This document shows, piece by piece, positions 8,433 through 41,362 of a stretch of DNA of 64,000 bases. Every line of letters starts with the position of its first letter. The first letter of the stretch is position 1. The notes beneath the pieces were generated by a model. It did not search any database and was not told the origin of the DNA. It saw only the letters and a list, made by a program, of their open reading frames with translations. The position numbers were made by a program, and so were the translations under genes. The stretch spans positions 6,944,001 through 7,008,000 of the forward strand of contig NC_047078.1 in NCBI RefSeq assembly GCF_902459465.1, read 5' to 3'. Origin of the DNA: Asterias rubens. Taxonomy: Eukaryota.

Positions 8433-8872
8433 TAATGCTAAAGTTTTTTCGTAAAACATAAACTGGGTGTTTATTTCAGGCACCATTACACGTGTTGTGC
8501 ACTTTAAAACACTTTGAATGCCCATCACCAAATTTTCTGATAAAAATGTTAACAAATCCTGTGCTTTTTTATTTAAAGTAGTACTCCATAGTCAAAAGTT
8601 ATTATTCAAAATAATATTTATTATTCATTGAAGGGAAATGAAATCTTACACTACTGGTTTCTTTATTTAGATTTGGTTTGATTTAAAACACAAATGGATT
8701 ATTACCCTTTTTTGCTAACATTAAGTTGTTATACTTTAAGTATTGTTAAAACTTTTGTATGTTTATTCAGGTTGCATTTTATTATTCGTTATCTCAGTTT
8801 TTTAGAACAAAATAAAGACCACAGACGTAGAAAACCTTTTACTGTATTCTCCCCTCGATTTGTTTTACCAAG

Positions 8873-9987
8873 GATAATCCGATTCGTCCAAGGCGCCCCA
8901 TTTATGGATCTTCAAAGTCATCTTCATCTCCACGTAGTTTCAGTGTAGAACAGCGTGGTAAGTAAATAATACAACCTCAAATGTCATCTTTCAAAAAGCT
9001 ATTTTGACCTTTTAAGATATGTTAAATTATTTTATACATATTTAGGTTTAGTAAAATTTCATGTAAGGATAGTTCAGTTAGTTTTCATCTTGCAGTGGTC
9101 ATGTTAAACAAGTAGAGTCTCGAGCACTTGAAACCTGTGGTTATATTAGTTCACAAATAGCACAAGTAAAGCAAAAGGAACATTCATTATTTTCTATGGT
9201 GAGGCCCAACTGATATACTTTTAAAAATTTAACAAAACACCAAACACAGAAAATATAAGCCTGACAGAAGAGAGCAAAACATGTTCAGAAAAACAAAGCA
9301 AATATTCTCTGCCAATAATTTATATTTGTTATTTCCCTGATTATTGCAGCCTCTCGTACCTAAAATCTATCAAAAAATAAACACTTTGTCAAGCTTCCAT
9401 AATATTTATTTCCCTGTCATAAACACCCAGTTTCGAACGTCATTTTTTAGGGAATTTAATTGATGTTCGCGAAACAATTATGGAATTTGCATGACACCCG
9501 AGAAAATTGATGGAGTAAGTTGCAAAATGATGCTCGGAACTTTATTACCTTTGCGCAATCCACATCAGAGCAGAAATTGATTTAGGTTAAAAAAAACTAG
9601 CTCGTAAACTTTCGACAAGAAATGGCTACAAGTGTAAACCAAAGAGCAACTGAAAGTCAACTGGATCAACAGACATCAAGAGACTTGTCAGAATTACATG
9701 TTCTTTCGAGTAAGATTCACTTGGTGTCATTAAAGCTGAATCTACATAGGATTAAATCTGTAGATGAAGCTCAAGTGAAAACAGACACCAAAGTATCAGA
9801 GAAACATCATCATGACAAAATGAAAGGGGCTCATTTTAAACTAGAGTTAACACTCAGAAGTGTGTTTATTTTGTCATTGTTCTTGCTATCACTTATACAC
9901 AGGTGTACTCAAATAATTTGTGCGTCCTTTTTTTAATACACAGAAGTAGAACCACTGAGTGCAAGAGAAGTGCAGGAAAAAGAAAAG
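8873..9987 (+). CDS. Exons H (8873-8957) and D (9944-9987)
   Basis: Near-identical to the 1204/2275 copies; splice sites intact. Confidence 0.55.
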
Positions 9988-10865
9988 GTTTGCTAATAAA
10001 TAGTTTGCCATTGCGTACAAAAAATGCCTAGTCCACAATTAAATACAATAATGTGATAATGGAATCCGATCCAGAGGATGTTGAACTTAAGGACGACACT
10101 TTCAAAAGGAAATGTTGCACAACAAAATCCATTACAACTGTCACTGGTTGGTTTTTACTTATCACTTTTAAGTTTAAGTTTCTGCCTTACAAACATTATC
10201 AAGCAAGATCTGACTTATCATGTCCCCACCTCTGTGCATAAACCTCTTTGATGCGGTATACCTACTAGGGGTTAAGATTGTTACCCTTCAGTTTCATGGC
10301 AATGATCTTTGAAAGTAAAACTGTCTGATCAAATGCACAAATTTAAAATGTCAAATTTATATGTTACTCAAATATTCAACTTGTAACAAATTATCTTGTG
10401 TATTTGCATACAAATTTAACTAAATCCTGGCAAATTAATACATGATTAGCGAAATAACTTGAAAGGGAAACCGACGACAGATTCACATCATAAGATGGAC
10501 TTTGTGCAGCCTGGAAAATCTACACACAAGGTTTGAACTATCACCTGATAAATATATATAAAAAGTCTATTTAAATTATATGAGCAGTCTGTTTTCCACT
10601 GTATAGCATGTAGTGGGTGTATTCGCGCACCGTAAGGATACATGTAGTGCAGTTTTGAATCTGTTGGAATGCACATCACCAAAGATCCTGATATAAACTA
10701 TTTAACATATTTTACTTTTTGCTTTAAAATATTACTCCACAGTCAACAATAATTATTTTTCATAACACTTATTTTCACTAAGGTCAACTGATTTCATTTT
10801 TATTTGGTTTGGTTTGAAAGCAAAAAACACTATCACAGTTTGTTGCTAATATTATGTGTTAAATA

Positions 10866-11204
10866 AAAACGTACTCGGTAACAAGCAACGGATAGCTGTT
10901 GATAGTATAAAACATTGTGAGAAACGGCTCCCTCTGAAGTGACATAGTTTTCGAGAAAAAAAAGTAATATTCCACGAATTTGATTTTTAGACCTCAGATT
11001 AAGAATTTGAGGTCTCGAAATCAACCATCTAAACGCACACAACTTCGTGTGACAAGGCTGATTTTTTCTTTCATTATTATCTCGCAACTTCGACGATCAA
11101 TTGAGCTCAAATGTTCACAGGTTTGTTATTTTATGCATATGTTGAGATACACCAAGGGAGAAGACTGGTCTTTGACAATTACCAATAGTGTCCACTGTGT
11201 TTAA
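10866..11204. mobile_element. Same MITE family, one copy per tandem unit (also 14875-16433 interrupted, 20103-20443, 24121-24461)
   Basis: Core gatagtataaaacattgtgagaaacggctccctctgaag...ttgagatacaccaag...aattaccaatagtgtcc; source of ORFs MRDNNERK/MIFRPQIK. Confidence 0.88.
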
Positions 11205-11237
11205 ACCAACATTTTGTTTTATGTTTTGTTTTACCAG

Positions 11238-13995
11238 CTCAAAATGGCCGAGATCCCTAAGATTTCTGAGAGTCCAGTGAGGACAACCGGAACAAAGGAA
11301 GTACAACAAACCAAAGACAAAGGTTAGTGGTGATGATTGGTGATTGGAAACTTATAAACAAGGAGAGACCAGATACTGTGGAAATGCAATACATGCCAAA
11401 ACTGGCAATACAAAACGTATAAATATTATGCAAGTTGTTAACAATTACTTATAAAAAGAATATTACAATCCTACATGCTTCTCATTTCTTTTAGCCGGAT
11501 TTGAAACAAAAGTAATAACATATTTTGCTTTACTTGGGGACTTGGTGAAAGTAAATAAATCTGGACAGACATCGATTGCAACTTATAGTTCAGTCATACT
11601 GCAGCTGGACCTGGAAAAAATTGCAACAGAATTGATTTCAACTGCTATGGGTTCTATAAACACCCAAGTTGAACATATCAAAAGTCCTCCAAAATCCAAG
11701 TGTCAGAAAGCCTTCAAATTCGCAAAAAAACATGATTTTGGAGGACTTTTGATATGTTAAAACTTGGGTGTCTATAGAACCCAAAACAGTTGAAATCGAT
11801 TCTGTTGCAATTTTGTCCAAGTCAAGCCAGTATTTCTGATAGATTGACTGGACAATTAGGCCTATATCATTCTTTGAAAGACTAAAGCTGGTTCACATTT
11901 TGAAAACAAACATGTTGCAGAAATAGTTGAAATCGATTGAATTTTACTAGCAAGGCACAACTTCATCAGATAAAGCTTAACATGGCTAAAGCATAATACA
12001 TGTATTATGTATTTTTTTCTTTTTAGTTATTCACGTGTCTTTGTTTTTATGTTCATATATTCAAAGTCTCTTTTCTTTGTACATGTATGTTAAAAAGGGA
12101 AACCGACGACAGATTCACATCATAAGAAGGCCATTGTGAAGCCTGGAAAATCTACACACAAGGTTTGAATTATCACCTGATAAATATATATAAAAAGTCT
12201 ATTTAAATGATATGAGCAGTCTGTTTTCCACTGTATAGCATGTAGTGGGTGTATTCGTGCACCGTAAGGATACATGTAGTGCAGTTTTGAATCTGTTGGA
12301 ATGCACATCACCAAAGATCCTGATATAAACTATCTAACATATTTTACTTTTTGCTTTAAAATATTACTCCACAGTCAACAATATTTATTTTTCACAACAC
12401 TTATTTTCAACTGATCTCATTTTTATTTGGTTTGGTTTGAAAGCAAAAAACACTAATATTATGTGTTACATGTAATGTATTAAAACATTCGGTTTTATGC
12501 AGGTTATGATTGATCAATGGTTATCTCATTAGACTCATTAGTCAAAAGTTATTATTCAAAATAATATTTATTTGTCATTGAAGGGAAGTTAAATCTTACA
12601 CTTCTGGTTTCTTTATTTAGATTTGGTTTGATTTAAAACACAAATGGATTATTACCCTTTTTTGCTAATATTAAGTTGTTATACTCTAAGTATTGTTAAA
12701 ACTTTGATGTTTACTCAGGTTGCATTTTATTATTCGTTATCTCAGTTTTTTAAAACAAAATAAAGACCACAGACGTAGAAATCCTTTTACTGTATTCTCG
12801 CCTCGATTTGTTTTACCCAGGGTCCTCTGAAGAAGTATGGATCTTCAAAGTCATCTTCATTTTCACGTAGTTTCAGTGTAGAACATCGTGGTAAGTAAAC
12901 AATAATAATATTATTAATAATAATCTATTGATTTTATATTGCGCTCTCTCCTGGATACATTTATGTTGTTTTTGTTTGTTACTGCCAACAACATAAGGCA
13001 ACTTCTATGAAATATGGACCGTTTTACAACCTCAAATGTCATCTTTCAAAAAACTATTTTGACCTTTTAAGATATGTTCAATTATTGTATACATATTTAG
13101 GTTTAGTGAAATGTTCATGTAAGGATAGTTCAGTTAGTTTTCATCTTGCAGTGGTCATGTTAAACAAGTAGAGTCTCGAGCACTTGAAACCTGTGGTTAT
13201 ATTATTTCACAAATAGCACAAGTAAAGCAAAATGAACAGTCATTATTTTCTATGGTGAGGCCCAACTGATATACTTTCAAAAAAATTAAACAAAACACCA
13301 AACACAGGAAATATAAGCCTGACAGAAGAGAGCAAAAAAGTTTCAGAAAAACAAAGCAAATATTCTCTGTCAATAATTTATATTTGTTATTTCCCTCTCG
13401 TACCTAAAATCTATCAAAAAATAAACACTTTGTCAAGCTTCCATACTATTTATTTCCCTGTCATAAACACCCAGTTTCGAACGTAATTTTTTAGGGAATT
13501 TAATTGATGTTCGCGAAACAATTACGGAATTTGCATGACGCCCGAGAAAATTGATGGAGTAAGTTGCAAAATGATGCTCGGAACTTTATTACCTTTGCGC
13601 AATCCACATCAGAGCAGAAATTGATTTAGTTTCCAAAAACTAGCTCGTAAACTTTCGACAAGAAATGGCTACAAGTGTAAACCAAAGAGCAACTGAAAGT
13701 CAACTGGATCAACAGACATCAAGAGACTTGTCAGAATTACATGTTCTTTCGAGTAAGATTAAATCTGTAGATGAAGCTCAAACGAAAACAGACACCAAAG
13801 TATCAGAGAAACAATATCATTACAAAATGAAAGAGGCTCATTTTAAACTAGAGTTAACACTCAGAAGTGTGTTTATTTTGTCATTGTTCTTGCTATCACT
13901 TATACACAGGTGTACTCAATTAATTTGTGCATACTTTTTTTTAATACACAGAAGTAGAACCACTGAGTGCAAGAGAAGTGCAGGAAAAAGAAAAG
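11238..13995 (+). CDS. Tandem unit 1 exon cassette: I 11238-11322, J 11495-11511, H 12821-12890, D 13952-13995
   Basis: LKMAEIPKISESPVRTTGTKEVQQTKDK / AGFETK / GPLKKYGSSKSSSFSRSFSVEHR / EVEPLSAREVQEKEK; 216 nt = 72 codons; strong splice sites at I (long T tract, AG|gttagt) and H (gtaagt). Confidence 0.55.
11608..11823. repeat. Foldback inverted repeat (~90-bp arms, ~36-nt loop), one per tandem unit (also ~16837-17052, 20847-21062, 24865-25081)
   Basis: gacctggaaaaaattgcaacagaa...aaaagtcctccaaaatc pairs with gattttggaggacttttg...ttctgttgcaattttgtccaagtc; probably a MITE. Confidence 0.85.
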
Positions 13996-14911
13996 GTTTG
14001 CTAATAAATAGTTTGCCATTGCGTACAAAAGATGCCTAGTCCACAATTAAATACAATAATGTGATAATGGAATCCGATCCAGAGGATGTTGAACTTAAGG
14101 ACGACACTTTCAAAAGGAAATGTTGCACAACAAAATCCATTACAACTGTCACTGGTTGGTTTTTACTTATCACTTTTAAGTTTAAGTTTCTGCCTTACAA
14201 ACATTATCAAGCAAGATCTGACTTATCATGTCCCCACCTCTGTGCATAAACCTCTTTGATGCGGTATACCTACTAGGGGTTAAGATTGTTACCCTTCAGT
14301 TTCATGGCAATGATCTTTGAAAGTAAAACTGTCTGATCAAATGCACAAATTTAAAATGTCAAATTTATATGTTACTCAAATATTCAACTTGTAACAAATT
14401 ATCTTGTGTATTTGCATACAAATTTAACTAAATCCTGGCAAATTAATACATGATTAGCGAAATAACTTGAAAGGGAAACCGACGACAGATTCACATCATA
14501 AGATGGACTTTGTGCAGCCTGGAAAATCTACACACAAGGTTTGAACTATCACCTGATAAATATATATAAAAAGTCTATTTAAATTATATGAGCAGTCTGT
14601 TTTCCACTGTATAGCATGTAGTGGGTGTATTCGCGCACCGTAAGGATACATGTAGTGCAGTTTTGAATCTGTTGGAATGCACATCACCAAAGATCCTGAT
14701 ATAAACTATTTAACATATTTTACTTTTTGCTTTAAAATATTACTCCACAGTCAACAATAATTATTTTTCATAACACTTATTTTCACTAAGGTCAATTGAT
14801 TTCATTTTTATTTGGTTTGGTTTGAAAGCAAAAAACACTATCACAGTTTGTTGCTAATATTATGTGTTAAATAAAAACGTACTCGGTAACAAGCAACGGA
14901 TAGCTGTTGAT

Positions 14912-16127
14912 TATTACCACATACGACACAGAAACACTTTGGTTTGATCAACAGAGTGGCCTGAGCAGCCTTTTATTTGTTTATGCTGCAATGAGCTAAG
15001 CCATAACAAAATGCTTGTATTTTATCAAACTTAACCAGATCTCCGGCAGTTGCCTGCCATCCGCAAGATCTTCTAAAATGTGTTTAATGCAAACCAATAA
15101 GCTGAACTGATTCCCGGTAGTTGCATCACCCGCGAAATCAAAAGTAACAAATAAAGCAATTAAAGCCAAACTGATTTCCGGCAGTTGCATAAATCCGCGA
15201 AATCAAAAGTAATAAACAAAGCAATTAAAGCCAAACTGATTTCCGCGAAATCAATAACAGTAAATCAACCAATAGCAAAACTGACCTCCGGCCGTAGCTA
15301 AATCCGCGAGGTCGCCAAAACTACTACTGCATACAGGTTTCCGGACGAGGCTGTACGACCGCGAAACCAAAAGCGTTAAAATAAAAGGTTTGCAAAGGAA
15401 CTTGAAATTAAAGCAAATATAGCACAGTTAAATAAACAGCACATATTCCCCGGTTGTTGGCAAATTAAGACAAAGCGACTAAAATATGTTTCATCCCGTC
15501 AACGCAGAATACCATAGTTATAATAATCATAATACATTTAACAAAGACCCCAAAGTAGCAAATTATAACAGCTGAATGAATATACCTGAGGACTATTGAG
15601 GTGTAAACAATGAAATACCGCCTGCGGGACCAACCTGAGAAGAGCGAAAAACTTCAAAAAACCCAAAGGGAAAAAGAAGGAAATTCTCTTACTGGCTCCT
15701 GAGATTTATGGCAGCCGAGTGTAAAAACTCCAGGATGTTCCTCATAAAATCAAATAAGCAACTTACAACGAAACGATAGCAATTTAGCCATTACTAAAAT
15801 TTTAGCTCAAAACGAATTTTAGAAACCGATACCAATTTTTTTAAGAAGGCGGTAGAATGGGGATGGCGGTGGGAATTCGAAAATTGATGACTGAAAAATT
15901 GTCAACTCAACTCAAAGGCTGCTCAGACAAAAGTGATCAAGCCAGCACAGACCGGCTATCAAGGAATGCAAGGCGCCGTCCAAGGGGGTCAATTGGCCGA
16001 AAGGCGAGGCAATAAACCAAATGCCCGGTCCAGACTGGTGACAGATTGAGCACACAGGTCCCGCGACAAGCCCGCCTGACTGTCTAGCGGTAATAAAATA
16101 TTTGAAGCACAAAGTTTTGGCCTCAAA
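14912..16127. mobile_element. Unclassified 1216-bp insertion inside a MITE of tandem unit 2
   Basis: Absent from the other three units; flanked by TTGAT at 14907-14911 and 16128-16132; more GC-rich; no convincing ORF. Confidence 0.88.
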
Positions 16128-16466
16128 TTGATAGTATAAAACATTGTGAGAAACGGCTCCCTCTGAAGTGACATAGTTTTCGAGAAAAAAAAGTAATATT
16201 CCACGAATTTGATTTTTAGACCTCAGATTAAGAATTTGAGGTCTCGAAATCAACCATCTAAACGCACACAACTTCGTGTGACAAGGCTGATTTTTTCTTT
16301 CATTATTATCTCGCAACTTCGACGATCAATTGAGCTCAAATGTTCACAGGTTTGTTATTTTATGCATATGTTGAGATACACCAAGGGAGAAGACTGGTCT
16401 TTGACAATTACCAATAGTGTCCACTGTGTTTAAACCAACATTTTGTTTTATGTTTTGTTTTACCAG

Positions 16467-19226
16467 CTCAAAATGGCCGAGATCCCTAAGATTTCTGAGA
16501 GTCCAGTGAGGACAACCGGAACAAAGGAAGTACAACAAACCAAAGACAAAGGTTAGTGGTGATGATTGGTGATTGGAAACTTATAAACAAGGAGAGACCA
16601 GATACTGTGGAAATGCAATACATGCCAAAACTGGCAATACAAAACGTATAAATATTATGCAAGTTGTTAACAATTACTTATTAAAAGAATATTACAATCC
16701 TACATGCTTCTCATTTCTTTTAGCCGGATTTGAAACAAAAGTAATAACATATTTTGCTTTACTTGGGGACTTGGTGAAAGTAAATAAATCTGGACAGACA
16801 TCGATTGCAACTTATAGTTCAGTCATACTGCAGCTGGACCTGGAAAAAATTGCAACAGAATTGATTTCAACTGCTATGGGTTCTATAAACACCCAAGTTG
16901 AACATATCAAAAGTCCTCCAAAATCCAAGTGTCAGAAAGCCTTCAAATTCGCAAAAAAACATGATTTTGGAGGACTTTTGATATGTTAAAACTTGGGTGT
17001 CTATAGAACCCAAAACAGTTGAAATCGATTCTGTTGCAATTTTGTCCAAGTCAAGCCAGTATTTCTGATAGATTGACTGGACAATTAGGCCTATATCATT
17101 CTTTGAAAGACTAAAGCTGGTTCACATTTTGAAAACAAACATGTTGCAGAAATAGTTGAAATCGATTGAATTTTACTAGCAAGGCACAACTTCATCAGAT
17201 AAAGCTTAACATGGCTAAAGCATAATACATGTATTATGTATTTTTTTCTTTTTAGTTATTCACGTGTCTTTGTTTTTATGTTCATATATTCAAAGTCTCT
17301 TTTCTTTGTACATGTATGTTAAAAAGGGAAACCGACGACAGATTCACATCATAAGAAGGCCATTGTGAAGCCTGGAAAATCTACACACAAGGTTTGAATT
17401 ATCACCTGATAAATATATATAAAAAGTCTATTTAAATGATATGAGCAGTCTGTTTTCCACTGTATAGCATGTAGTGGGTGTATTCGTGCACCGTAAGGAT
17501 ACATGTAGTGCAGTTTTGAATCTGTTGGAATGCACATCACCAAAGATCCTGATATAAACTATCTAACATATTTTACTTTTTGCTTTAAAATATTACTCCA
17601 CAGTCAACAATATTTATTTTTCACAACACTTATTTTCAACTGATCTCATTTTTATTTGGTTTGGTTTGAAAGCAAAAAACACTAATATTATGTGTTACAT
17701 GTAATGTATTAAAACATTCGGTTTTATGCAGGTTATGATTGATCAATGGTTATCTCATTAGACTCATTAGTCAAAAGTTATTATTCAAAATAATATTTAT
17801 TTGTCATTGAAGGGAAGTTAAATCTTACACTTCTGGTTTCTTTATTTAGATTTGGTTTGATTTAAAACACAAATGGATTATTACCCTTTTTTGCTAATAT
17901 TAAGTTGTTATACTCTAAGTATTGTTAAAACTTTGATGTTTACTCAGGTTGCATTTTATTATTCGTTATCTCAGTTTTTTAAAACAAAATAAAGACCACA
18001 GACGTAGAAATCCTTTTACTGTATTCTCGCCTCGATTTGTTTTACCCAGGGTCCTCTGAAGAAGTATGGATCTTCAAAGTCATCTTCATTTTCACGTAGT
18101 TTCAGTGTAGAACATCGTGGTAAGTAAACAATAATAATATTATTAATAATAATCTATTTATTTTATATTGCGCTCTCTCCTGGATACATTTATGTTGTTT
18201 TTGTTTGTTACTGCCAACAACATAAGGCAACTTCTATGAAATATGGACCGTTTTACAACCTCAAATGTCATCTTTCAAAAAAATATTTTGACCTTTTAAG
18301 ATATGTTCAATTATTGTATACATATTTAGGTTTAGTGAAATGTTCATGTAAGGATAGTTCAGTTAGTTTTCATCTTGCAGTGGTCATGTTAAACAAGTAG
18401 AGTCTCGAGCACTTGAAACCTGTGGTTATATTATTTCACAAATAGCACAAGTATAAAGCAAAATGAACAGTCATTATTTTCTATGGTGAGGCCCAACTGA
18501 TATACTTTCAAAAAAATTAAACAAAACACCAAACACAGGAAATATAAGCCTGACAGAAGAGAGCAAAAAAGTTTCAGAAAAACAAAGCAAATATTCTCTG
18601 TCAATAATTTATATTTGTTATTTCCCTCTCGTACCTAAAATCTATCAAAAAATAAACACTTTGTCAAGCTTCCATACTATTTATTTCCCTGTCATAAACA
18701 CCCAGTTTCGAACGTAATTTTTTAGGGAATTTAATTGATGTTCGCGAAACAATTACGGAATTTGCATGACGCCCGAGAAAATTGATGGAGTAAGTTGCAA
18801 AATGATGCTCGGAACTTTATTACCTTTGCGCAATCCACATCAGAGCAGAAATTGATTTAGTTTCCAAAAACTAGCTCGTAAACTTTCGACAAGAAATGGC
18901 TACAAGTGTAAACCAAAGAGCAACTGAAAGTCAACTGGATCAACAGACATCAAGAGACTTGTCAGAATTACATGTTCTTTCGAGTAAGATTAAATCTGTA
19001 GATGAAGCTCAAACGAAAACAGACACCAAAGTATCAGAGAAACAATATCATTACAAAATGAAAGAGGCTCATTTTAAACTAGAGTTAACACTCAGAAGTG
19101 TGTTTATTTTGTCATTGTTGTTGCTATCACTTATACACAGGTGTACTCAATTAATTTGTGCATACTTTTTTTTAATACACAGAAGTAGAACCACTGAGTG
19201 CAAGAGAAGTGCAGGAAAAAGAAAAG
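16467..19226 (+). CDS. Tandem unit 2 exon cassette: I 16467-16551, J 16724-16740, H 18050-18119, D 19183-19226
   Basis: Same exons as unit 1. Confidence 0.55.
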
Positions 19227-20476
19227 GTTTGCTAATAAATAGTTTGCCATTGCGTACAAAAGATGCCTAGTCCACAATTAAATACAATAATGTGATAATG
19301 GAATCCGATCCAGAGGATGTTGAACTTAAGGACGACACTTTCAAAAGGAAATGTTGCACAACAAAATCCATTACAACTGTCACTGGTTGGTTTTTACTTA
19401 TCACTTTTAAGTTTAAGTTTCTGCCTTACAAACATTATCAAGCAAGATCTGACTTATCATGTCCCCACCTCTGTGCATAAACCTCTTTGATGCGGTATAC
19501 CTACTAGGGGTTAAGATTGTTACCCTTCAGTTTCATGGCAATGATCTTTGAAAGTAAAACTGTCTGATCAAATGCACAAATTTAAAATGTCAAATTTATA
19601 TGTTACTCAAATATTCAACTTGTAACAAATTATCTTGTGTATTTGCATACAAATTTAACTAAATCCTGGCAAATTAATACATGATTAGCGAAATAACTTG
19701 AAAGGGAAACCGACGACAGATTCACATCATAAGATGGACTTTGTGCAGCCTGGAAAATCTACACACAAGGTTTGAACTATCACCTGATAAATATATATAA
19801 AAAGTCTATTTAAATTATATGAGCAGTCTGTTTTCCACTGTATAGCATGTAGTGGGTGTATTCGCGCACCGTAAGGATACATGTAGTGCAGTTTTGAATC
19901 TGTTGGAATGCACATCACCAAAGATCCTGATATAAACTATTTAACATATTTTACTTTTTGCTTTAAAATATTACTCCACAGTCAACAATAATTATTTTTC
20001 ATAACACTTATTTTCACTAAGGTCAACTGATTTCATTTTTATTTGGTTTGGTTTGAAAGCAAAAAACACTATCACAGTTTGTTGCTAATATTATGTGTTA
20101 AATAAAAACGTACTCGGTAACAAGCAACGGATAGCTGTTGATAGTATAAAACATTGTGAGAAACGGCTCCCTCTGAAGTGACATAGTTTTCGAGAAAAAA
20201 AAGTAATATTCCACGAATTTGATTTTTAGACCTCAGATTAAGAATTTGAGGTCTCGAAATCAACCATCTAAACGCACACAACTTCGTGTGACAAGGCTGA
20301 TTTTTTCTTTCATTATTATCTCGCAACTTCGACGATCAATTGAGCTCAAATGTTCACAGGTTTGTTATTTTATGCATATGTTGAGATACACCAAGGGAGA
20401 AGACTGGTCTTTGACAATTACCAATAGTGTCCACTGTGTTTAAACCAACATTTTGTTTTATGTTTTGTTTTACCAG

Positions 20477-23244
20477 CTCAAAATGGCCGAGATCCCTAAG
20501 ATTTCTGAGAGTCCAGTGAGGACAACCGGAACAAAGGAAGTACAACAAACCAAAGACAAAGGTTAGTGGTGATGATTGGTGATTGGAAACTTATAAACAA
20601 GGAGAGACCAGATACTGTGGAAATGCAATACATGCCAAAACTGGCAATACAAAACGTATAAATATTATGCAAGTTGTTAACAATTACTTATTAAAAGAAT
20701 ATTACAATCCTACATGCTTCTCATTTCTTTTAGCCGGATTTGAAACAAAAGTAATAACATATTTTGCTTTACTTGGGGACTTGGTGAAAGTAAATAAATC
20801 TGGACAGACATCGATTGCAACTTATAGTTCAGTCATACTGCAGCTGGACCTGGAAAAAATTGCAACAGAATTGATTTCAACTGCTATGGGTTCTATAAAC
20901 ACCCAAGTTGAACATATCAAAAGTCCTCCAAAATCCAAGTGTCAGAAAGCCTTCAAATTCGCAAAAAAACATGATTTTGGAGGACTTTTGATATGTTAAA
21001 ACTTGGGTGTCTATAGAACCCAAAACAGTTGAAATCGATTCTGTTGCAATTTTGTCCAAGTCAAGCCAGTATTTCTGATAGATTGACTGGACAATTAGGC
21101 CTATATCATTCTTTGAAAGACTAAAGCTGGTTCACATTTTGAAAACAAACATGTTGCAGAAATAGTTGAAATCGATTGAATTTTACTAGCAAGGCACAAC
21201 TTCATCAGATAAAGCTTAACATGGCTAAAGCATAATACATGTATTATGTATTTTTTTCTTTTTAGTTATTCACGTGTCTTTGTTTTTATGTTCATATATT
21301 CAAAGTCTCTTTTCTTTGTACATGTATGTTAAAAAGGGAAACCGACGACAGATTCACATCATAAGAAGGCCATTGTGAAGCCTGGAAAATCTACACACAA
21401 GGTTTGAATTATCACCTGATAAATATATATAAAAAGTCTATTTAAATGATATGAGCAGTCTGTTTTCCACTGTATAGCATGTAGTGGGTGTATTCGTGCA
21501 CCGTAAGGATACATGTAGTGCAGTTTTGAATCTGTTGGAATGCACATCACCAAAGATCCTGATATAAACTATCTAACATATTTTACTTTTTGCTTTAAAA
21601 TATTACTCCACAGTCAACAATATTTATTTTTCACAACACTTATTTTCAACTGATCTCATTTTTATTTGGTTTGGTTTGAAAGCAAAAAACACTAATATTA
21701 TGTGTTACATGTAATGTATTAAAACATTCGGTTTTATGCAGGTTATGATTGATCAATGGTTATCTCATTAGACTCCATAGTCAAAGGTTATTATTCAAAA
21801 TAATATTTATTATTCATTGAAGGGAAATGAAATCTTACACTACTGGTTTCTTTATTTAGATTTGGTTTGATTTAAAACACAAATGGATTATTACCCTTTT
21901 TTGCTAATAATAAGTTGTTATACTCTAAGTATTTTTAACAATTTTGATGTTTATTCAGGTTGCATTTTATTGTTCGTTATCTCAGTTTTTTAGAACAAAA
22001 TAAAGACCACAGACGTAGAAAACCTTTTACTGTATTCTCCCCTCGATTTGTTTTACCCAGGGTCCTTCGATGGGTCACACTATTCATTTTCCTCCATCTT
22101 TTTATGGATCATCTTCACCTCCACGTAGTTTCAGTGTAGAACATCGTGGTAAGTAAATAATAATAATAATAATTTATTTATTTTATATTGCGCTCTCTCC
22201 TGGATACATGTTGGTAGTTTTTGTTTGTTACTGCCAACAACATAAGGCACCTTCTTTGAAATATGGAACGTTTTACAACCTCAAATGTCATCTTTCAAAA
22301 AACTATTTTGACCTTTTAAGATATGTTAAATTATTTTATACATATTTAGGTTTAGTAAAATGTTCATGTAAGGATAGTTTAGTTAGTTTTCATCTTGCAG
22401 TGGTCATGTTAAACAAGTAGAGTCTCGAGCACTTGAAACATGTGGTTATATTAGTTCACAAATAGCACAAGTAAAGCAAAAGGAACATTCATTATTTTCT
22501 ATGGTGAGGCCCAACTGATATACTTTCAAAAAAATTAAACAAAACACCAAACACAGAAAATATAAGCCTGACAGAAGAGAGCAAAAAAGTTTCAGAAAAA
22601 CAAAGCAAATATTCTCTGTCAATAATTTATATTTGTTATTTCCCTCTCGTACCTAAAATCTATCAAAAAATAAACACTTTGTCAAGCTTCCATAATATTT
22701 ATTTCCCTGTCATAAATACCCAGTTTCGAACGTCATTTTTTAGGGAATTTAATTGATGTTCGCGAAACAATTACGGAATTTGCATGACACCCGAGAAAAT
22801 TGATGGAGTAAGTTGCAAAATGATGCTCGGAACTTTATTACCTTTGCGCAATCCACATCAGAGCAGAAATTGATTTAGTTTCCAAAAACTAGCTCGTAAA
22901 CTTTCGACAAGAAATGGCTACAAGTGTAAACCAAAGAGCAACTGAAAGTCAACTGGATCAACAGACATCAAGAGACTTGTCAGAATTACATGTTCTTTCG
23001 AGTAAGATTAAATCTGTAGATGAAGCTCAAACGAAAACAGACACCAAAGTATCAGAGAAACAATATCATTACAAAATGAAAGAGGCTCATTTTAAACTAG
23101 AGTTAACACTCAGAAGTGTGTTTATTTTGTCATTGTTGTTGCTATCACTTATACACAGGTGTACTCAATTAATTTGTGCATACTTTTTTTTAATACACAG
23201 AAGTAGAACCACTGAGTGCAAGAGAAGTGCAGGAAAAAGAAAAG
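20477..23244 (+). CDS. Tandem unit 3 exon cassette: I 20477-20561, J 20734-20750, H 22061-22148, D 23201-23244
   Basis: Variant H = GPSMGHTIHFPPSFYGSSSPPRSFSVEHR (88 nt, frame preserved). Confidence 0.55.
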
Positions 23245-24494
23245 GTTTGCTAATAAATAGTTTGCTATTGCGTACAAAAGATGCCTTATCCACAATTAAA
23301 TACAATAATGTGATAATGGAATCCGATCCAGAGGATGTTGAACTTAAGGACGACACTTTCAAAACAAAATGTTGCACAACAAAATCCATTACAACTGTCA
23401 CTGGTTGGTTTTTACTTATCACTTTTAAGTTTAAGTTTCTGCCTTACAAACATTATCAAGCAAGATCTGACTTATCATGTCCCCACCTCTGTGCATAAAC
23501 CTCTTTGATGCGGTATACCTACTAGGGGTTAAGATTGTTACCCTTCAGTTTCATGGCAATGATCTTTGAAAGTAAAACTGTCTGATCAAATGCACAAATT
23601 TAAAATGTCAAATTTATATGTTACTCAAATATTCAACTTGTAACAAATTATCTTGTGTATTTGCATACAAATTTAACTAAATCCTGGCAAATTAATACAT
23701 GATTAGCGAAATAACTTGAAAGGGAAACCGACGACAGATTCACATCATAAGATGGACTTTGTGCAGCCTGGAAAATCTACACACAAGGTTTGAACTATCA
23801 CCTGATAAATATATATAAAAAGTCTATTTAAATGATATGAGCAGTCTGTTTTCCACTGTATAGCATGTAGTGGGTGTATTCGCGCACCGTAAGGATACAT
23901 GTAGTGCAGTTTTGAATCTGTTGGAATGCACATCACCAAAGATCCTGATATAAACTATTTAACATATTTTACTTTTTGCTTTAAAATATTACTCCACAGT
24001 CAACAATAATTATTTTTCATAACACTTATTTTCACTAAGGTCAACTGATTTCATTTTTATTTGGTTTGGTTTGAAAGCAAAAAACATTATCACAGTTTGT
24101 TGCTAATATTATGTGTTAAATAAAAACGTACTCGGTAACAAGCAACGGATAGCTGTTGATAGTATAAAACATTGTGAGAAACGGCTCCCTCTGAAGTGAC
24201 ATAGTTTTCGAGAAAAAAAAGTAATATTCCACGAATTTGATTTTTAGACCTCAGATTAAGAATTTGAGGTCTCGAAATCAACCATCTAAACGCACACAAC
24301 TTCGTGTGACAAGGCTGATTTTTTCTTTCATTATTATCTCGCAACTTCGACGATCAATTGAGCTCAAATGTTCACAGGTTTGTTATTTTATGCATATGTT
24401 GAGATACACCAAGGGAGAAGACTGGTCTTTGACAATTACCAATAGTGTCCACTGTGTTTAAACCAACATTTTGTTTTATGTTTTGTTTTACCAG

Positions 24495-27400
24495 CTCAAA
24501 ATGGCCGAGATCCCTAAGATTTCTGAGAGTCCAGTGAGGACAACCGGAACAAAGGAAGTACAACAAACCAAAGACAAAGGTTAGTGGTGATGATTGGTGA
24601 TTGGAAACTTATAAACAAGGAGAGACCAGATACTGTGGAAATGCAATACATGCCAAAACTGGCAATACAAAACGTATAAATATTATGCAAGTTGTTAACA
24701 ATTACTTATTAAAAGAATATTACAATCCTACATGCTTCTCATTTCTTTTAGCCGGATTTGAAACAAAAGTGATAACATATTTTGCTTTACTTGGGGACTT
24801 GGTGAAAGTAAATAAATCTGGACAGACATCGATTGCAACTTATAGTCCAGTCATACTGCAGCTGGACCTGGAAAAAATTGCAACAGAATTTATTTCAACT
24901 GCTATGGGTTCTATAAACACCCAAGTTGAACATATCAAAAGTCCTCCAAAATCCAAGTGTCCGAAAGCCTTCAAATTCGCAAAAAAAAAATGATTTTGGA
25001 GGACTTTTGATATGTTAAACTTGGGTGTCTATAGAACCCAAAACAGTTGAAATCGATTCTGTTGCAATTTTGTCCAGGTCAAGCCAGTATTTCTGATAGA
25101 TTGACTGGACAATTAGGCCTATATCATTCTTTGAAAGACTAAAGCTGGTTCACATTTTGAAAACTAACATGTTGCAGAAATAGTTGAAATCGATTGAATT
25201 TTACTAGCAAGGCACAACTTCATCAGATAAAGCTTAACATGGCTAAAGCATAATACATGTATTATGTATTTTTTTCTTTTTAGTTATTCACGTGTCTTTG
25301 TTTTTATGTTCATATATTCAAAGTCTCTTTTCTTTGTACATGTATGTTAAAAAGGGAAACCGACGACAGATTCACATCATAAGATGGACTTTGTGAAGCC
25401 TGGAAAATCTACACACAAGGTTTGAATTATCACCTGATAAATATATATAAAAAGTCTATTTAAATGATATGAGCAGTCTGTTTTCCACTGTATAGCATGT
25501 AGTGGGTGTATTCATGCATTCGCGCACCGTTATAAGGATACATGTAGTGCAGTTTTGAATCTGTTGGAATGCACATCACCAAAGATCCTGATATAAACTA
25601 TCTAACATATTTTACTTTTTGCTTTAAAATATTACTCCACAGTCAACAATAGTTATTTTTCACAACACTTATTTTCAACTGATCTCATTTTTATTTGGTT
25701 TGGTTTGAAAGCAAAAAACACTAATATTATGTGTTACATGTAATGTATTAAAACATTCGGTTTTATGCAGGTTATGATTGATCAATGGTTATCTCATTAG
25801 ACTCATTAGTCAAAAGTTATTATTCAAAATAATATTTATTTGTCATTGAAGGGAAGTTAAATCTTACACTTCTGGTTTCTTTATTTAGATTTGGTTTGAT
25901 TTAAAACACAAATGGATTATTACCCTTTTTTGCTAATATTAAGTTGTTATACTCTAAGTATTGTTAAAACTTTGATGTTTACTCAGGTTGCATTTTATTA
26001 TTCGTTATCTCAGTTTTTTAAAACAAAATAAAGACCACAGACGTAGAAATCCTTTTACTGTATTCTCCCCTCGATTTGTTTTACCCAGAGTCCTCGGATG
26101 AGTTACATTCCTCAAATGAGTCGCATTCCTCAAATTCCTCCATCTTTTTGGGGATCTTCAAAGTCATCTTCATCTCCTCGTAGTTTCAGTGTAGAACATC
26201 GTGGTAAGTAAATAATAATAATAATAATAATAATTTATTGATTTTATATTGCGCTCTCTCCAGGATACATATATGTAGTTTTTGTTTGTTACTGCCAACA
26301 ACATAAGGCATCTTCTTTGAAATATGGATCGTTTTACCACCTCAAATGTCATCTTTCAAAAAACTTATTTGACCTTTTAAGATATGTTAAATTATTTTAT
26401 ACATATTTAGGTTTAGTAAAATTTCATGTAAGGATAGTTCAGTTAGTTTTCATCTTGCAGTGGTCATGTTAAACAAGTAGAGTCTCGAGCACTTGAAACC
26501 TGTGGTTATATTAGTTCACAAATAGCACAAGTAAAGCAAAAGGAACATTCATTATTTTCTATGGTGAGGCCCAACTGATATACTTTCAAAAAAATTAAAC
26601 AAAACACCAAACACAGAAAATATAAGCCTGACAGAAGAGAGCAAAACATGTTCAGAAAAACAAAGCAAATATTCTCTGTAAATAATTTATATTTGTTATT
26701 TCCCTGATTATTGCAGCCTCTCGTACCTAAAATCTATCAAAAAATAAACACTTTGTCAAGCTTCCATAATATTTATTTCCCTGTCATAAACACCCAGTTT
26801 CGAACGTCATTTTTTAGGGAATTTAATTGATGTTCGCGAAACAATTATGGAATTTGCATGACACCCGAGAAAATTGATGGAGTAAGTTGCAAAATGATGC
26901 TCGGAACTTTATTACCTTTGCGCAATCCGCATCAGAGCAGAAATTGATTTAGGTTAAAAAAACTAGCTCGTAAACTTTCGACAAGAAATGGCTACAAGTG
27001 TAAACCAAAGAGCAACTGAAAGTCAACTGGATCAACAGACATCAAGAGACTTGTCAGAATTACATGTTCTTTCGAGTAAGATTCACTTGGTGTCATTGAA
27101 GCCGGATCTACATAGGATTGAATCTGTAAATGAAGCTCAAATGAAAACAGACACCAAAGTATCAGAGAAACAACATCATGACAAAATGAAAGAGGCTCAT
27201 TTTAAACTAGAGTTAACACTCAGAAGTGTGTTTATTTTGTCATTGTTCTTGCTATCACTTATACACAGGTGTACTCAAATAATTTGTGCGTCCTTTTTTA
27301 ATTTACAGAAGTAGAACCACTGAGTGCAAGAGAAGTGCAGGAAAAAGAAAAGGTTTGCTAACAAATAGTTTGCTATTGCGTACAAAAGATGCCTTATCCA

Positions 27401-30400
27401 CAATTAAATACAATAATGTGATAATGGAATCCGATCCAGAGGATGTTGAACTTAAGGACGACACTTTCAAAACGAAATGGTGCACAACGAAATCCATTAC
27501 AACTGTCACTGGTTGGTTTTTACTTATCAATTTTAAGTTTAAGTTTCTGCCTTACAAACATTATCAAGCAAGCTCTGACTTATCATGTCCCCACCTCTGT
27601 GCATAAACCTCTTTGATGCGGTATACCTACTAGGGGTTAAGATTGTTACCCTTAAGTTTCATGGCAATGATTATTGAAAGTAAAACTGTCTGATCAAATG
27701 CACAAATTTAAAATGTCAAATTTATATGTTACTCAAATATTCAACTTGTAACAAATTATCTGGTGTATTGGCATACAAATTTAACTAAATCCTGGCAAAT
27801 CAATACATGATGAGCGAAATTACTTACATTAGACTCCTACCGGGAACAAACAAGTGTTATCGGCGGGAATCAACTATGATCTACAAAATGTGTTAAGGAT
27901 TATCAACTTGTGTTATGTAGTTTTGAGCTACATTGTTGGATAGGCCTTATAGCATGATAGCATGATGGTTTACTTGTCTTTCACTAAACAATCCACCACT
28001 TCGAAAGCAGCTCCCTTTAGTTGAAACTCATAAAATAAGTTGTTACTGGTCAACCTTTTACCAGTCTATAAGGAACACTTACGGTTGATCCCTCAGCTAT
28101 GTGTATAAATAGCTTCACAAACCAAAACTTCTTACAGGTGACTGCCCTGATTACTCGGGTAGTTTCCGCAACCTTGTATTCCGTTTGCATTTGTCCCTTC
28201 ATACCATCTCTTTATTACACTTTATCCTTAACTTTTCACTCATTTAAAAACTGTTCTGATTTTTCTTAAGCATTTGAGGCACATCTCAAAGGAAATCGAC
28301 GAGCTCTCATCTATAGTAAGAACGGAGATGCTACCTGGTCAGTTACATTCATTGATCGAGAAATTGATCAAGGAACAGAAACAGCTTGTAAACTTCCAAC
28401 AAGAAATGGCTGCAAGTGTAGAACAAAGAGCAACTGACAGTCAACTGGATCAACGGAAATCAAGAGACTTGTCAGAATTATTTATTCTTTTGAGTAAGAT
28501 CCACTTGGTGTCATTAAGGCTGAATCTACATAGGATGAAATCTGTTGATGAAGCTCAAATGAAAACGGACACCGAAGTATCAGAGAAACAAGATTACAAA
28601 GATTACAAAATGTATCAGGCTCTTTCTAAACTAGAGTGGACACTGCAGCAGCATCTTCATACACTACAACATATCGAAAGGTATGATACAAAACCACAGA
28701 ACATAGAAAGTGTATACTACTTCCAACAGATGCTAGTTGATGATTTGCAAGGCTTGGCTCAACAAACCCTACAGGTAAAGGAGCCTGCCTATCAAGAGCA
28801 GTGCATGAAGAATATGAATGTGTTCATTAACACACAGCAGCAATTGGTTCAAAACCTCACAAATCTGCAAAAGCAAAAAAAAGGCAGCAAGCTGGAGAAG
28901 GCGTCCTCTAAGCAAGATGATCTACCTGCACGGGACACTGGCAAGCAGCAAAATGAACTGGAACTGATCACAGAACAGACTGATTTGATGAAGGAGCCCT
29001 CTAAGCAAGATGATCTACCTGCAGGGGAGGTTGGTAAACAGCTAAATGAACTGGAACTGATCACAGAACAGACTGATTTGATGAAGGAGCCCTCTAAGCA
29101 AGATGATCTACCTGCAGGGGAGGTTGGTAAACAGCAAAACGAACTGGAGCTGATCACAGAACAGACTGATTTGATGAAGGAGCCCTCTAAGCAAGATGAT
29201 CTACCTGCAGGGGAGGTTGGTAAACAGCTAAATGAACTGGAACTGATCACAGAACAGACTGATTTGATGAAGGAGCCCTCTAAGCAAGATGATCTACCTG
29301 CAGGGGAGGTTGGTAAACAGCAAAACGAACTGGAACTGATCACAGAACAGACTGAGTTGTTGCTAGATTGTCTCCGCTGGATGCGATGTCGTGGAGTATG
29401 GCAAGAGTGCACTGACCATTTCATATGGATGTTGATATGTTCTGTACTTACTGTACATCATATGTCCCATGGTCTTAGCTGGGAATGTGTTGAGGAGGTC
29501 TTCTCATCACATTCACATTTTCATTACAGGCCGAGGTATGGCAAACTGCAACAACTTGGTTACATTATAGACAGGACCATGCACAGTCAAAGAAGATTCT
29601 TGAAAGCTGAACTGTGGAATAAAATACAAAGTAAGAAGAACAAACTTATTACTGATGGTTTGTTATCTTAGTGAAGGATCCAGCATAAACATGCAATTCA
29701 ACTCAATGAATTTCAAATTTGCATACTTAACTTACATAAGGGATAAAGAATAGTTTTATTGCTTTACCCATACACCTATGTGCGTTATGCAGTGTATAAA
29801 ATACTTTCCTTGAGTCATGTGAAAAACTCCTAGACCTTGACCTTTTTTTAGAGCAAATGTCTTGCCACTACAAACCAACGAGATTGACCCTAAGACACCT
29901 GCCTTAAAGTACTATGCAAATTTCAGTGTATTAACAGATTTTAATGTATTAACCAGATTTCAAGTCAAATCACATAACTTTGAGAAATGTTGCGGATGAA
30001 GTGCCCATCAGTGTGTTAACATCAGAAATAACAATGTAGTTTACATCGACTACATTATGTTGGTAAACCTTGACATTGTTACTATAGACTTATTTTTTTT
30101 TTTACACAGCAATTAATACAGTTATCAAAATATATGTCTAAAGTGGTGGAAAGAAACGTGGGTATATAATGTTTTTGTTTTTTATGAACAGACTGATTTA
30201 TATTTGTTTACAAATGTTCAGAGGCACTGACACCTCGGAAACGTCGAGCAAGACGCTTAATGAAGGGTGACCCAACTGATGTGAGACACTCAAAGCAAGA
30301 AGACCAAATTGATGTGAGACATAATTATCTTAGTCAAAAGTTGATTCCACTTTAAACTATTCTACCTGTTAAATATCAAATAGATACTGCTGATAATAAT

Positions 30401-32097: not shown

Positions 32098-32269
32098 GAA
32101 ATTTAAGGATGACACTTTCAAAACGAATAGTTGCACAGCTAAATCCACTACAACTGTCACTGGTTGGTTTCTACTTATCAATTTAAGTTTCAGTTCCTGC
32201 CCTACACACATATCCACCAAGCTCAAGCTTATCCCGACCCCACCTCTATAGCACATTTTGATAATTCAG

Positions 32270-33855: not shown

Positions 33856-33961
33856 GATGCCACTGACGAGCCCATTGATGAAGACAGCAATGTAGATGCT
33901 GCAGGATTTACTTCAATCACACAGACTACTCAAGCAGTTACACAGATGGCACCAAGAAATG
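33856..33961 (+). CDS. Exon F, acidic linker (DATDEPIDEDSNVDAAGFTSITQTTQAVTQMAPRN)
   Basis: T-rich tract plus atcag acceptor; G|gtgagc donor; 106 bp; phase 1 matches the ZU5 exon. Confidence 0.75.

Positions 33962-41331: not shown

Positions 41332-41362
<31 letters not shown>

What the first reader, a model, noticed from the sequence alone, without database searches (positions are those of the whole stretch)
10459..27830. A 4-kb tandem unit is a phase-closed four-exon cassette, so copy number can change protein length freely
Each unit holds I (0>1), J (1>0), H (0>1) and D (1>0), totalling 72, 72, 78 and 87 codons. Gain or loss of a unit by unequal crossover preserves the frame, and so does skipping whole units or I+J / H+D pairs at splicing. 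The second paralog (59-61 kb) has no such unit, so copy number already varies between paralogs (4 vs 0). About 4 kb of DNA per ~72 aa makes this an exon-level accordion that is invisible to ORF finders.
Basis: partly seen in the sequence, partly recalled or inferred. Interest (0 to 1): 0.8.

Follow-up and report, generated by a model that had tools for sequence, protein, structure and literature searches.

The report
Gene's front end repeated four times
In the common starfish, a 4-kb stretch holding the first four coding exons (start codon included) of a death-domain signalling gene sits four times in a row and all copies stay in one reading frame, so they could lengthen the protein, but no RNA evidence yet shows that they do.

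Summary
The tandem array is real: four units at 10459-27825 (4008, 5231, 4018 and 4110 bp), 98-99.8% alike. They are told apart by a transposon insertion with a 5-bp target duplication and by three versions of one exon.

Homology shows what they are: the canonical 5' coding end of a coiled-coil/ZU5/UPA/Death gene family of Asterias.
- I is the start-codon exon (MAEIPK..., 85 nt).
- J is 65 nt.
- H is a hypervariable Ser/Pro exon of 70, 70, 88 and 115 nt.
- D is 44 nt.

The units hold 88, 88, 94 and 103 codons, not 72, 72, 78 and 87. The differences between units are reproduced exactly.

The chain K0-D0-(I-J-H-D)x4-exon A is open for 436 codons. Closure follows from an ancestral splice acceptor 6 nt before the ATG, which carries about a 0.3 chance expectation, so it is not a sign of selection.

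The A. amurensis ortholog has one such set, at its start. No RefSeq model I saw has the start exon inside a protein.

RNA-run contigs show J-, H- and D-type exons well above intron depth, but the junction tables were swamped by a SINE. Serial inclusion of several units is therefore plausible and unproven.

This is a new member of a known kind (LPA-type multi-exon repeat).

The parts
10459..27825 (+). Tandem array of four ~4-kb units (10459-14466, 14467-19697, 19698-23715, 23716-27825)
   Evidence: Self-BLAST gives 97.9-100% identity over the whole unit. The repeat families show spacings of 4008, 5231, 4018 and 4108 bp.
11238..11322 (+). Copies lie at 16467-16551, 20477-20561 and 24495-24579, and all four are identical. 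The ATG is at 11244 in a strong context (AAAATGG).
   Evidence: tblastn to residues 1-27/29 of P0003 and P0009 gives 86-93% identity, E about 1e-9. The acceptor is ttttaccag| and the donor |GTTAGT. The acceptor 6 nt before the ATG is conserved in L002 and L003.
12098..12162 (+). Exon J, 65 nt, phase 1>0 (KPTTDSHHK...STHK). Copies lie at 17327-17391, 21337-21401 and 25355-25419.
   Evidence: tblastn to residues 26-49 of P0003 and P0009. At 25385 the depth in RNA-run contigs is 261, 550 and 123, against an intron background of about 1-30.
12821..12890 (+). It is 70 nt in units 1 and 2 (18050-18119), 88 nt in unit 3 (22061-22148) and 115 nt in unit 4 (26089-26203). Unit 4 holds an 18-nt in-frame repeat.
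   Evidence: It is homologous to exon K (85 nt) of RefSeq P0013 and to the matching part of P0012. Units differ by 13-18% here, against 0.1-2% elsewhere. TRF finds a repeat of period 18 at 26098-26135.
13952..13995 (+). Exon D, 44 nt, phase 1>0 (VEPLSAREVQEKEK). Copies lie at 19183-19226, 23201-23244 and 27309-27352.
   Evidence: Exact match to residues 132-146 of RefSeq P0013. Splice sites are listed. Depth is raised in bin 27200-27399.
10466..10530 (+). J', a duplicate of exon J at the start of each unit (also 14474-14538, 19705-19769, 23723-23787). It is probably a dead exon.
   Evidence: It lies in a 370-bp internal duplication, 94.6% identical. Its acceptor context is purine-rich. Its depth bin is at background. 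Inclusion gives a stop.
13644..13866 (+). Fragment of exon A lying in the K'-D intron (also about 18875-19097, 22893-23115 and 26967-27225).
   Evidence: It is paralogous to part of exon A. RefSeq P0013 skips it in the paralog. Its acceptor is A-rich. Depth at 27020 equals the unspliced background.
10852..11204 (.). High-copy interspersed repeat (SINE-like) just upstream of e1 in every unit (for example 24155-24461)
   Evidence: Other copies lie at 8220-8432, 32298-32521, 39503-39799, 44415-44742, 45277-45549 and 58807-59019. Depth exceeds 200,000 in the contigs of all four runs. It is also present upstream of e1 in L002.
14912..16127 (.). Unit-2-specific transposon insertion
   Evidence: It is absent from the other units and flanked by a 5-bp duplication, TTGAT.
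8873..9987 (+). Head before the array: exon K0 (8873-8957) and exon D0 (9944-9987). Small exon R0 lies upstream at 7360-7395.
   Evidence: These are exact peptide matches to RefSeq P0013, whose own exons lie in the paralogous head at 57942-60574.
28271..29392 (+). Large coiled-coil exon A2, which follows the array and holds a 93-bp coding repeat (5 copies)
   Evidence: tblastn to P0003 and P0009 gives 75-76% identity. The acceptor is cttaag|CATTTG. TRF detects the repeat. Depth is 47-477.
33856..44141 (+). Tail exons of the same gene: ZU5 (34523-35182), UPA-like exons and the Death domain (43797-44141)
   Evidence: Pfam gives ZU5 at 4e-18 and Death at 1e-10. tblastn to P0003 and P0010 finds all the tail exons.

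Best explanation
What it is. This is a young, species-specific fourfold tandem duplication of the 5' coding end of a coiled-coil/ZU5/UPA/Death gene of Asterias rubens.

Why the frame closes. e1 is entered through an old, conserved 3' splice site 6 nt before its ATG, and those 6 nt are in frame and stop-free. Every unit is therefore both a possible translation start and a possible internal cassette of 88-103 codons.

How it most likely works (inferred). Pre-mRNAs that begin upstream of a unit are spliced exon by exon through the units that follow. They could begin in the upstream module and head (K0-D0) or at an earlier unit. The message would then carry one to four copies of a Lys/Ser-rich, probably disordered segment in front of exon A2 and the ZU5-UPA-Death tail. 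Unequal crossing-over in the introns would change the copy number without a frameshift.

Status of each step.
- Shown: the array, the identity of the exons, the splice signals, the phases and the open chain.
- Inferred: transcription through the array and serial inclusion.
For: - The array is real and its units can be told apart.
- The window is A. rubens LR699108.1: L004 matches window 44186-64000 at 100%.
- e1 and J match residues 1-49 of A. amurensis P0003 and P0009. K and D match A. rubens RefSeq P0013 exactly. P0012 shows the order e1-J-X-K in one model.
- All 16 exons have AG/GT splice sites and open frames. The chain K0-D0-(e1-J-K'-D)x4-A2 runs 436 codons without a stop.
- The e1 acceptor at -6 is conserved in the ortholog L002 and the paralog L003, although the upstream sequence of L003 is otherwise unalignable. 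e1 is therefore an exon that is spliced into, and read-through RNA should recognise it.
- The upstream module is joined to the head by the same exons (R, K, D) that RefSeq joins in the neighbouring paralog.
- In RNA-run contigs the J exon has depth 261, 550 and 123, against 1-30 in the flanking intron. The variant typical of units 1-3 (A at 25385) accounts for 92, 441 and 123 of that. The K' and D bins are also raised.
- K-type exons of five lengths (70, 85, 88 and 115 nt here, 97 nt in P0012) all keep phase 0>1.
Against: - No junction between units (D to e1) was seen.
- In every RefSeq protein retrieved, e1 is at the N-terminus and never internal. It occurs once per gene in L002, L003 and L005.
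- No A. rubens protein of 585-1860 aa or of 44-140 aa from this locus turned up.
- RefSeq models of the paralog make long skips: D joins an exon 6.8 kb on, past exon A4. The array could be skipped in the same way.
- Contigs were laid at 92% likeness or more, so J-, K- and D-type depth may come from paralogs elsewhere in the genome. Run X3 shows exon A but no J.
- The units are too alike (0-2% divergence) for an exon-versus-intron test of constraint.
Confidence: 0.5

Rival explanations
1. One set per message. The array offers four alternative 5' ends, or only unit 4 works as the gene's start, as in the ortholog. Each mRNA then carries a single e1-J-K'-D set joined to exon A2. Copy number would change the choice of variable exon K' or nothing at all, and would not change protein length.
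For: - e1 holds the family's ATG in a strong context. It is the first coding exon, once per gene, in L002, L003 and L005 and in all RefSeq models seen.
- Unit 4 plus A2 plus the tail reproduces the ortholog's architecture.
- K' differs between units, as variable first-exon sets do.
Against: - e1 has a strong, conserved acceptor. Downstream units should therefore be spliced in rather than skipped. This differs from protocadherin-type variable exons, which lack a 3' splice site (from established knowledge).
- No expressed exon that could serve as a unit-internal 5' UTR exon appears in the bins upstream of e1, outside the SINE-masked part.
- The sequence upstream of the SINE in the ortholog is not present in the unit.
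Confidence: 0.25
2. Inert duplication. The array lies in what is effectively an intron, or in a decaying gene. Under this reading, transcripts from the upstream module splice from D0 straight to exon A2 or to the exon at 33856. Messages that do include array exons are rare by-products.
For: - RefSeq joins D to a far downstream exon in the neighbouring paralog, skipping exon A4.
- That paralog's model starts at an internal Met inside a truncated module, so the cluster holds decaying copies.
- No fitting A. rubens protein model was found.
- The units are young enough that intact exons prove nothing.
Against: - J-type exons occur in this window only inside the array. In three RNA runs their depth is like that of exon A, and 4-20 times the depth of the flanking intron.
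- All 16 exons and their splice sites are intact.
- The length variants of K' all keep the frame.
Confidence: 0.2
3. The copy number is an assembly artefact: a long-read assembly over-expanded or collapsed a shorter or longer array.
For: Units 1 and 2 differ at only 5 of about 3,450 aligned non-exon sites outside the insertion. Such repeats are hard to assemble.
Against: - Unit 2 has its own transposon insertion with a target-site duplication.
- Units 3 and 4 have their own K' versions and 1.3-2% divergence.
- At least three, and probably four, distinct copies therefore exist.
Confidence: 0.05

Closest known systems
Human LPA kringle IV-2 repeat (multi-exon coding tandem repeat)
   Same: A kb-sized unit is repeated head to tail inside one gene. 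Each unit holds whole exons whose lengths sum to a multiple of three, so copy number sets protein length. LPA is listed as an intragenic tandem repeat in PMC4063668, and the remaining details come from my own knowledge. Large tandem repeats that hold exons are a recognised class (PMC4063668).
   Different: The LPA unit encodes a folded domain from the middle of the protein, and its inclusion and polymorphism are proven. Here the unit is the gene's 5' end with the start codon, the product looks disordered, and neither inclusion nor polymorphism was shown.
Other in-frame multi-exon intragenic duplications: CR1 long homologous repeats, the NEB triplicate region, the haptoglobin Hp2 exon 3-4 duplication (from my own knowledge, not checked here)
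   Same: Blocks of several exons are duplicated in frame by unequal crossing-over, giving length alleles.
   Different: Those blocks are internal. None contains the initiator exon.
Asterias amurensis ortholog XP_071806545.1 (P0003, locus L002)
   Same: The exon family and order are the same: e1, J, a D-like exon, exon A, ZU5, UPA, Death. The 3' flank is syntenic at 92-97% identity.
   Different: It has one e1-J set, at the CDS start, with an extra exon X that the starfish array units lack. It has no upstream module or head within 10 kb.
Clustered variable first exons (protocadherin or UGT1A type; from my own knowledge)
   Same: A tandem row of alternative start-containing exon sets lies in front of shared downstream exons. 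One exon differs between sets.
   Different: Those variable exons have their own promoters and no 3' splice site. Here e1 has a conserved 3' splice site and no unit-internal promoter was found.
ZU5-UPA-Death tails of UNC5, PIDD1 and ankyrins
   Same: The downstream part of the gene has Pfam ZU5 and Death hits. Its ortholog also carries a UPA hit, which marks as weak.
   Different: The N-terminal part (the e1-J-K-D segment and the coiled-coil exon A with its 93-bp repeat) has no Pfam family above the curated cut-off. It resembles none of those proteins.

Membership tests
Coding multi-exon tandem repeat (LPA KIV-2 type) | kb-sized units repeated head to tail within one transcription unit | tested here: met
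   There are four units, 98-99.8% alike. Same-strand family exons lie on both sides of the array. That it is one transcription unit is inferred.
Coding multi-exon tandem repeat (LPA KIV-2 type) | Each unit holds complete exons with intact splice sites | tested here: met
   All 16 exons have AG/GT sites and open frames. Their identity comes from homology to RefSeq proteins.
Coding multi-exon tandem repeat (LPA KIV-2 type) | Exon lengths of a unit sum to a multiple of three, and the frame stays open across units | tested here: met
   The units hold 264, 264, 282 and 309 nt. The chain is open for 436 codons.
Coding multi-exon tandem repeat (LPA KIV-2 type) | Exons of several units occur together in one mature mRNA | tested here: inconclusive
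   The exon types lie above intron depth, but the junction tables were swamped by a SINE. No protein model with repeated sets was found.
Coding multi-exon tandem repeat (LPA KIV-2 type) | Copy number varies between individuals | not tested
Between species the count is 4 versus 1.
Variable first-exon cluster (protocadherin/UGT1A type) | Variable exons lack a 3' splice site, so downstream ones are not spliced in | tested here: not met
   e1 has a polypyrimidine tract plus AG 6 nt before the ATG, conserved in three loci.
Variable first-exon cluster (protocadherin/UGT1A type) | Each variable exon has its own promoter | not testable with these tools
   There are no 5'-end data. No raised depth appears upstream of e1 outside the SINE-masked part.
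ZU5-UPA-Death proteins | ZU5 domain followed by a Death domain in the same gene | tested here: met
   Pfam gives ZU5 at 4.2e-18 (34508-35200) and Death at 1.3e-10 (43716-44141). The exon order matches P0003 and P0010.
ZU5-UPA-Death proteins | UPA domain between ZU5 and Death | tested here: inconclusive
   The ortholog carries a precomputed PF17217 hit, marked weak in the locus listing. The window's exons at 36.4-37.6 kb gave no Pfam hit when scanned alone.

The most novel reading that the evidence does not exclude
A gene's initiator-exon module has been recruited as an internal, in-frame, copy-number-variable cassette. On this reading, starfish individuals would carry different numbers of an 88-103-residue disordered spacer, each copy with its own version of a fast-changing Ser/Pro exon. 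The spacer would sit between two coiled-coil modules of a ZU5-UPA-Death signalling protein, tuning the reach or the valency of a putative immune or cell-death adaptor.
Probability: 0.3. Interest if true: 0.55.

Novelty: new member of a known kind. Interest (0 to 1): 0.33.

Why it matters
If several units are spliced into one message, this would be a clear invertebrate case of a multi-exon length "accordion". It would also be an unusual one, because it is built from the gene's own start module and sits in a lineage-specific, fast-evolving death-domain gene cluster.

It also shows how an acceptor just upstream of an ATG lets a duplicated 5' end become internal coding sequence at once.

If the units are not spliced in, the locus is simply a young partial gene duplication in a cluster that is visibly in flux. 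That is ordinary.

In either case the locus warns annotators. The exons are 44-115 nt long in 4 kb of DNA, and in my searches no protein from this locus turned up in the length ranges covered.

Tried and rejected
1. My first guess for exons I and J was the two 65-nt copies (10466 and 12098). I rejected it because 65+65 nt does not close the frame, and J has a stop in the frame that I would need.
2. My first guess for exon H was the exon-A-like open stretch at 13644-13866. I rejected it for four reasons. RefSeq skips it in the paralog. Its acceptor is A-rich. Depth at 27020 is at background. The raised bin in run X2 comes from an exon-A-type contig (A>C at 27020).
3. Read laying on 23600-29590 gave joint, loose-end and piece tables filled by the repeat at 24155-24461, so no splice junctions were readable.
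4. Protein searches with the exon-A fragment and with P0009:1-80 found no transcript-derived fragments. The search with P0003 found no A. rubens model of this locus in 585-1860 aa.
5. Exact scans of metagenome contigs for the e1-J and D-e1 junctions were empty, as expected.
6. Comparing exon and intron divergence between units is uninformative: 0/194 exon sites differ against 1.3%, but the two relics also show 0.
7. Exon X of the A. amurensis models was not found in the window.
8. Rfam found nothing in 8-32 kb.
Full report
**1. Is the array there?**

Yes. Self-comparison shows four head-to-tail units at 10459-14466, 14467-19697, 19698-23715 and 23716-27825, 97.9-100% identical to unit 1.
- Unit 2 is longer because of a 1216-bp insertion (14912-16127) flanked by a 5-bp duplication, TTGAT. 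This is a transposon that landed in one copy.
- Pairwise divergence outside the exons is 0.14% (units 1 and 2), 1.3% (units 1 and 3) and about 2% (any unit against unit 4).
- The unit-specific insertion and three versions of one exon make a pure assembly artefact unlikely.
- The copies of the flanking region at 0.6-2.8 kb and 58.9-61.0 kb run straight into exon A without any unit.

**2. Where the window comes from**

Locus L004 was fetched through the RefSeq protein XP_033641264.1 (P0013, LOC117301407). It matches window 44186-64000 at 100% over 19,815 bases. The window is therefore Asterias rubens GCA_902459465.3, LR699108.1, at about 6,944,001-7,008,000.

**3. What the exons are**

No ORF finder sees them. 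Homology does.

The large exon after the array (A2, 28271-29392) finds two starfish proteins in a search without length limits.

tblastn of these proteins on the window and a splice-site scan give the following for every unit:
- e1, 85 nt (unit 1: 11238-11322), phase 0>1. It matches residues 1-27 (MAEIPK...) of A. amurensis P0003 and P0009.
- J, 65 nt (12098-12162), phase 1>0. It matches residues 28-48.
- K', 70, 70, 88 and 115 nt in units 1-4 (12821-12890, 18050-18119, 22061-22148, 26089-26203), phase 0>1. It is homologous to the 85-nt exon K of RefSeq P0013 and to the matching part of P0012.
- D, 44 nt (13952-13995), phase 1>0. It is an exact match to EVEPLSAREVQEKEK of P0013.

So H is K'.

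The unit totals are 264, 264, 282 and 309 nt, which is 88, 88, 94 and 103 codons. The differences between units are the same.

**4. Two further exon-like pieces**

Each unit starts with a 370-bp duplicate of the J region (94.6% identical), which holds a second 65-nt exon copy, J' (10466-10530 in unit 1).
- Its acceptor context is purine-rich, because the duplication breakpoint lies 8 nt upstream.
- Its depth bin is at background.
- Splicing it between D and e1, or between D and J, gives a stop.

Between K' and D lies a fragment of exon A (13644-13866 in unit 1).
- RefSeq skips this fragment in the neighbouring paralog.
- Depth at 27020 equals the unspliced background.
- The raised bin in one run comes from an exon-A-type contig.

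I treat both pieces as relics.

**5. The frame**

The chain K0 (8873-8957) - D0 (9944-9987) - (e1-J-K'-D)x4 - start of A2 is 1308 nt, or 436 codons, without a stop. e1+J is 150 nt, and K'+D is 114, 114, 132 and 159 nt.

Why does the frame close? J, K' and D follow e1 in the normal coding sequence, so their phases are given. Closure needs only that e1 be enterable in frame.

e1 has a polypyrimidine tract and an AG 6 nt before its ATG (ttttaccag|CTCAAAATGG), and those two codons are stop-free. The same acceptor at -6 is present in the A. amurensis ortholog (L002). It is also present in an A. rubens paralog (L003), whose upstream sequence is otherwise unalignable.

So the acceptor is an old feature. 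e1 is normally exon 2, entered from a non-coding exon. Being in frame and stop-free over 6 nt has an expectation of about 0.3. Closure is therefore a fortunate by-product and not evidence of selection for an accordion.

**6. The unit is the gene's own front end**

- In L002, L003 and L005, e1 occurs once, at the first codon. In L002 and L005 it is followed by a single J. L004 has neither exon.
- L002 is the ortholog by 3' synteny: L002 24047-34978 matches window 41281-51226 at 92-97%. It has one e1-J set, preceded by the same SINE.
- Unit 4 plus A2 plus the tail reproduces the ortholog's architecture. The tail runs from 33856 and comprises ZU5 at 34523-35182, UPA-like exons and Death at 43797-44141 (Pfam hits).
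- The array is therefore a post-speciation fourfold duplication of the 5' coding end, minus the ortholog's exon X.
- It lies downstream of a further family module (0.6-7.2 kb) and a "head" (R0, K0, D0). That head is built like the one RefSeq splices together in the neighbouring gene.

**7. RNA evidence**

I had one read-laying run, which I used on 23600-29590 with four runs kept as contigs. The joint, loose-end and piece tables were filled by a high-copy repeat at 24155-24461, so no splice junction can be read.

The depth tables still help.
- At 25385, inside J of unit 4, depth is 261, 550 and 123 in three runs, against about 1-30 in the flanking introns.
- The letter typical of J in units 1-3 accounts for 92, 441 and 123 of that depth.
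- The bins holding K' and D are raised as well, and exon A2 stands at 47-477.
- Unspliced contigs at low depth cross e1/intron, H/intron and D/intron, so the runs also hold pre-mRNA or DNA.

Caveats:
- Contigs were laid from 92% likeness, so paralogs elsewhere may contribute.
- The e1 bin is masked by the repeat.
- Run X3 shows exon A but no J.

**8. What was not found**

- No retrieved RefSeq protein has e1 in an internal position.
- No A. rubens protein from this locus appeared among candidates of 585-1860 aa or 44-140 aa.
- This absence is ambiguous. There may be no model, or a model outside those length ranges. A model holding the upstream module, the array and the tail would exceed 1860 aa by my rough estimate.

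**9. Reading**

Shown:
- the array;
- the identity of the exons, their intact splice signals and their phases;
- the open chain;
- the single-copy state in the ortholog.

Inferred:
- RNA that starts upstream of a unit will recognise the strong, conserved acceptor of the next e1 and splice the sets in series. This would add 88-103 residues per unit.
- The added segment looks disordered: Lys, Ser, Glu, Thr and Pro make up 58% of the unit-1 cassette, disorder-promoting residues 77%, and hydrophobic residues 18%.

My estimates are:
- about 0.5 that several sets occur together in at least some messages;
- 0.25 that each message carries only one set (alternative or single start);
- 0.2 that the array is skipped or inert, since RefSeq models in the paralog skip 6.8 kb including exon A4;
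- 0.05 that the copy number is an assembly error.

**10. Comparison with what is known**

Multi-exon, in-frame tandem repeats whose copy number sets protein length are a known kind. LPA is listed as an intragenic tandem repeat, and exon-bearing macrosatellites are recognised as a class, in PMC4063668. CR1, NEB and haptoglobin Hp2 are examples from my own knowledge.

This locus would be a new member of that kind, with one twist: the unit is the initiator module. It does not fit the protocadherin/UGT1A scheme, because e1 has a 3' splice site.

The K' exon is a local hot spot. Units differ by 13-18% there, with length changes that include an 18-nt in-frame repeat, and every version keeps the frame. 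Frame-keeping could, however, be inherited through gene conversion from working paralogs.

Noticed in passing
window 3892-4108, 28897-29359, 62119-62767: There is a 93-bp (31-codon) tandem repeat inside the large coiled-coil exon A, with 2.3, 5.0 and 7.0 copies in three of the four copies of that exon. It is open in frame.
   Followed up: partly
window 5494-7195, 30788-31655, 55662-57776: A 43-44-bp C/T-rich minisatellite follows each module, with about 39, 15 and 48 copies. In the RefSeq model of the neighbouring gene it lies in the intron between the exons at 55557-55619 and 57942-57977.
   Followed up: partly
window 24155-24461 and the same place in each unit; also 8220-8432, 32298-32521, 39503-39799, 44415-44742, 45277-45549, 58807-59019: This is a very high-copy interspersed repeat. 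Thousands of contigs and summed depths above 200,000 in all four runs swamped the read-laying tables. It also sits just upstream of the start exon in the A. amurensis ortholog. Rfam gives no hit.
   Followed up: partly
window 54186-60574 and beyond (L004): RefSeq LOC117301407 starts at an internal Met inside a truncated module (copy 3). It then uses exons R, K and D of the next head, and joins D to an exon 6.8 kb further on, skipping the intact exon A4 with its 7-copy repeat. The model may be incomplete, or the gene may be decaying.
   Followed up: partly
window 32743-33406 (- strand): This is an inverted copy (96%) of the stretch 27403-28065, which lies between exon D and exon A. It sits between the A2 module and the ZU5 exons. 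The same element occurs near 210-460 and 32098-32247.
   Followed up: no
window 31995-32072 (- strand): ARAGORN calls a tRNA-Val (AAC)-like sequence next to that repeat. It may be the head of a tRNA-derived SINE.
   Followed up: no
window 5494-10460 vs 56060-61047: There is a higher-order duplication. The pair (module + spacer + head) occurs twice in the window at 94% identity, and 26335-29359 matches 59556-62581 at 99.1%. That points to very recent exchange between the two genes.
   Followed up: partly
window 59357-59374 (also 12722-12736, 17951-17965, 25990-26004): An optional six-codon piece (VAFYYS) distinguishes RefSeq isoforms X1 and X2 of the neighbouring gene. Copies of its AFYYS part lie upstream of K' in units 1, 2 and 4.
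   Followed up: no
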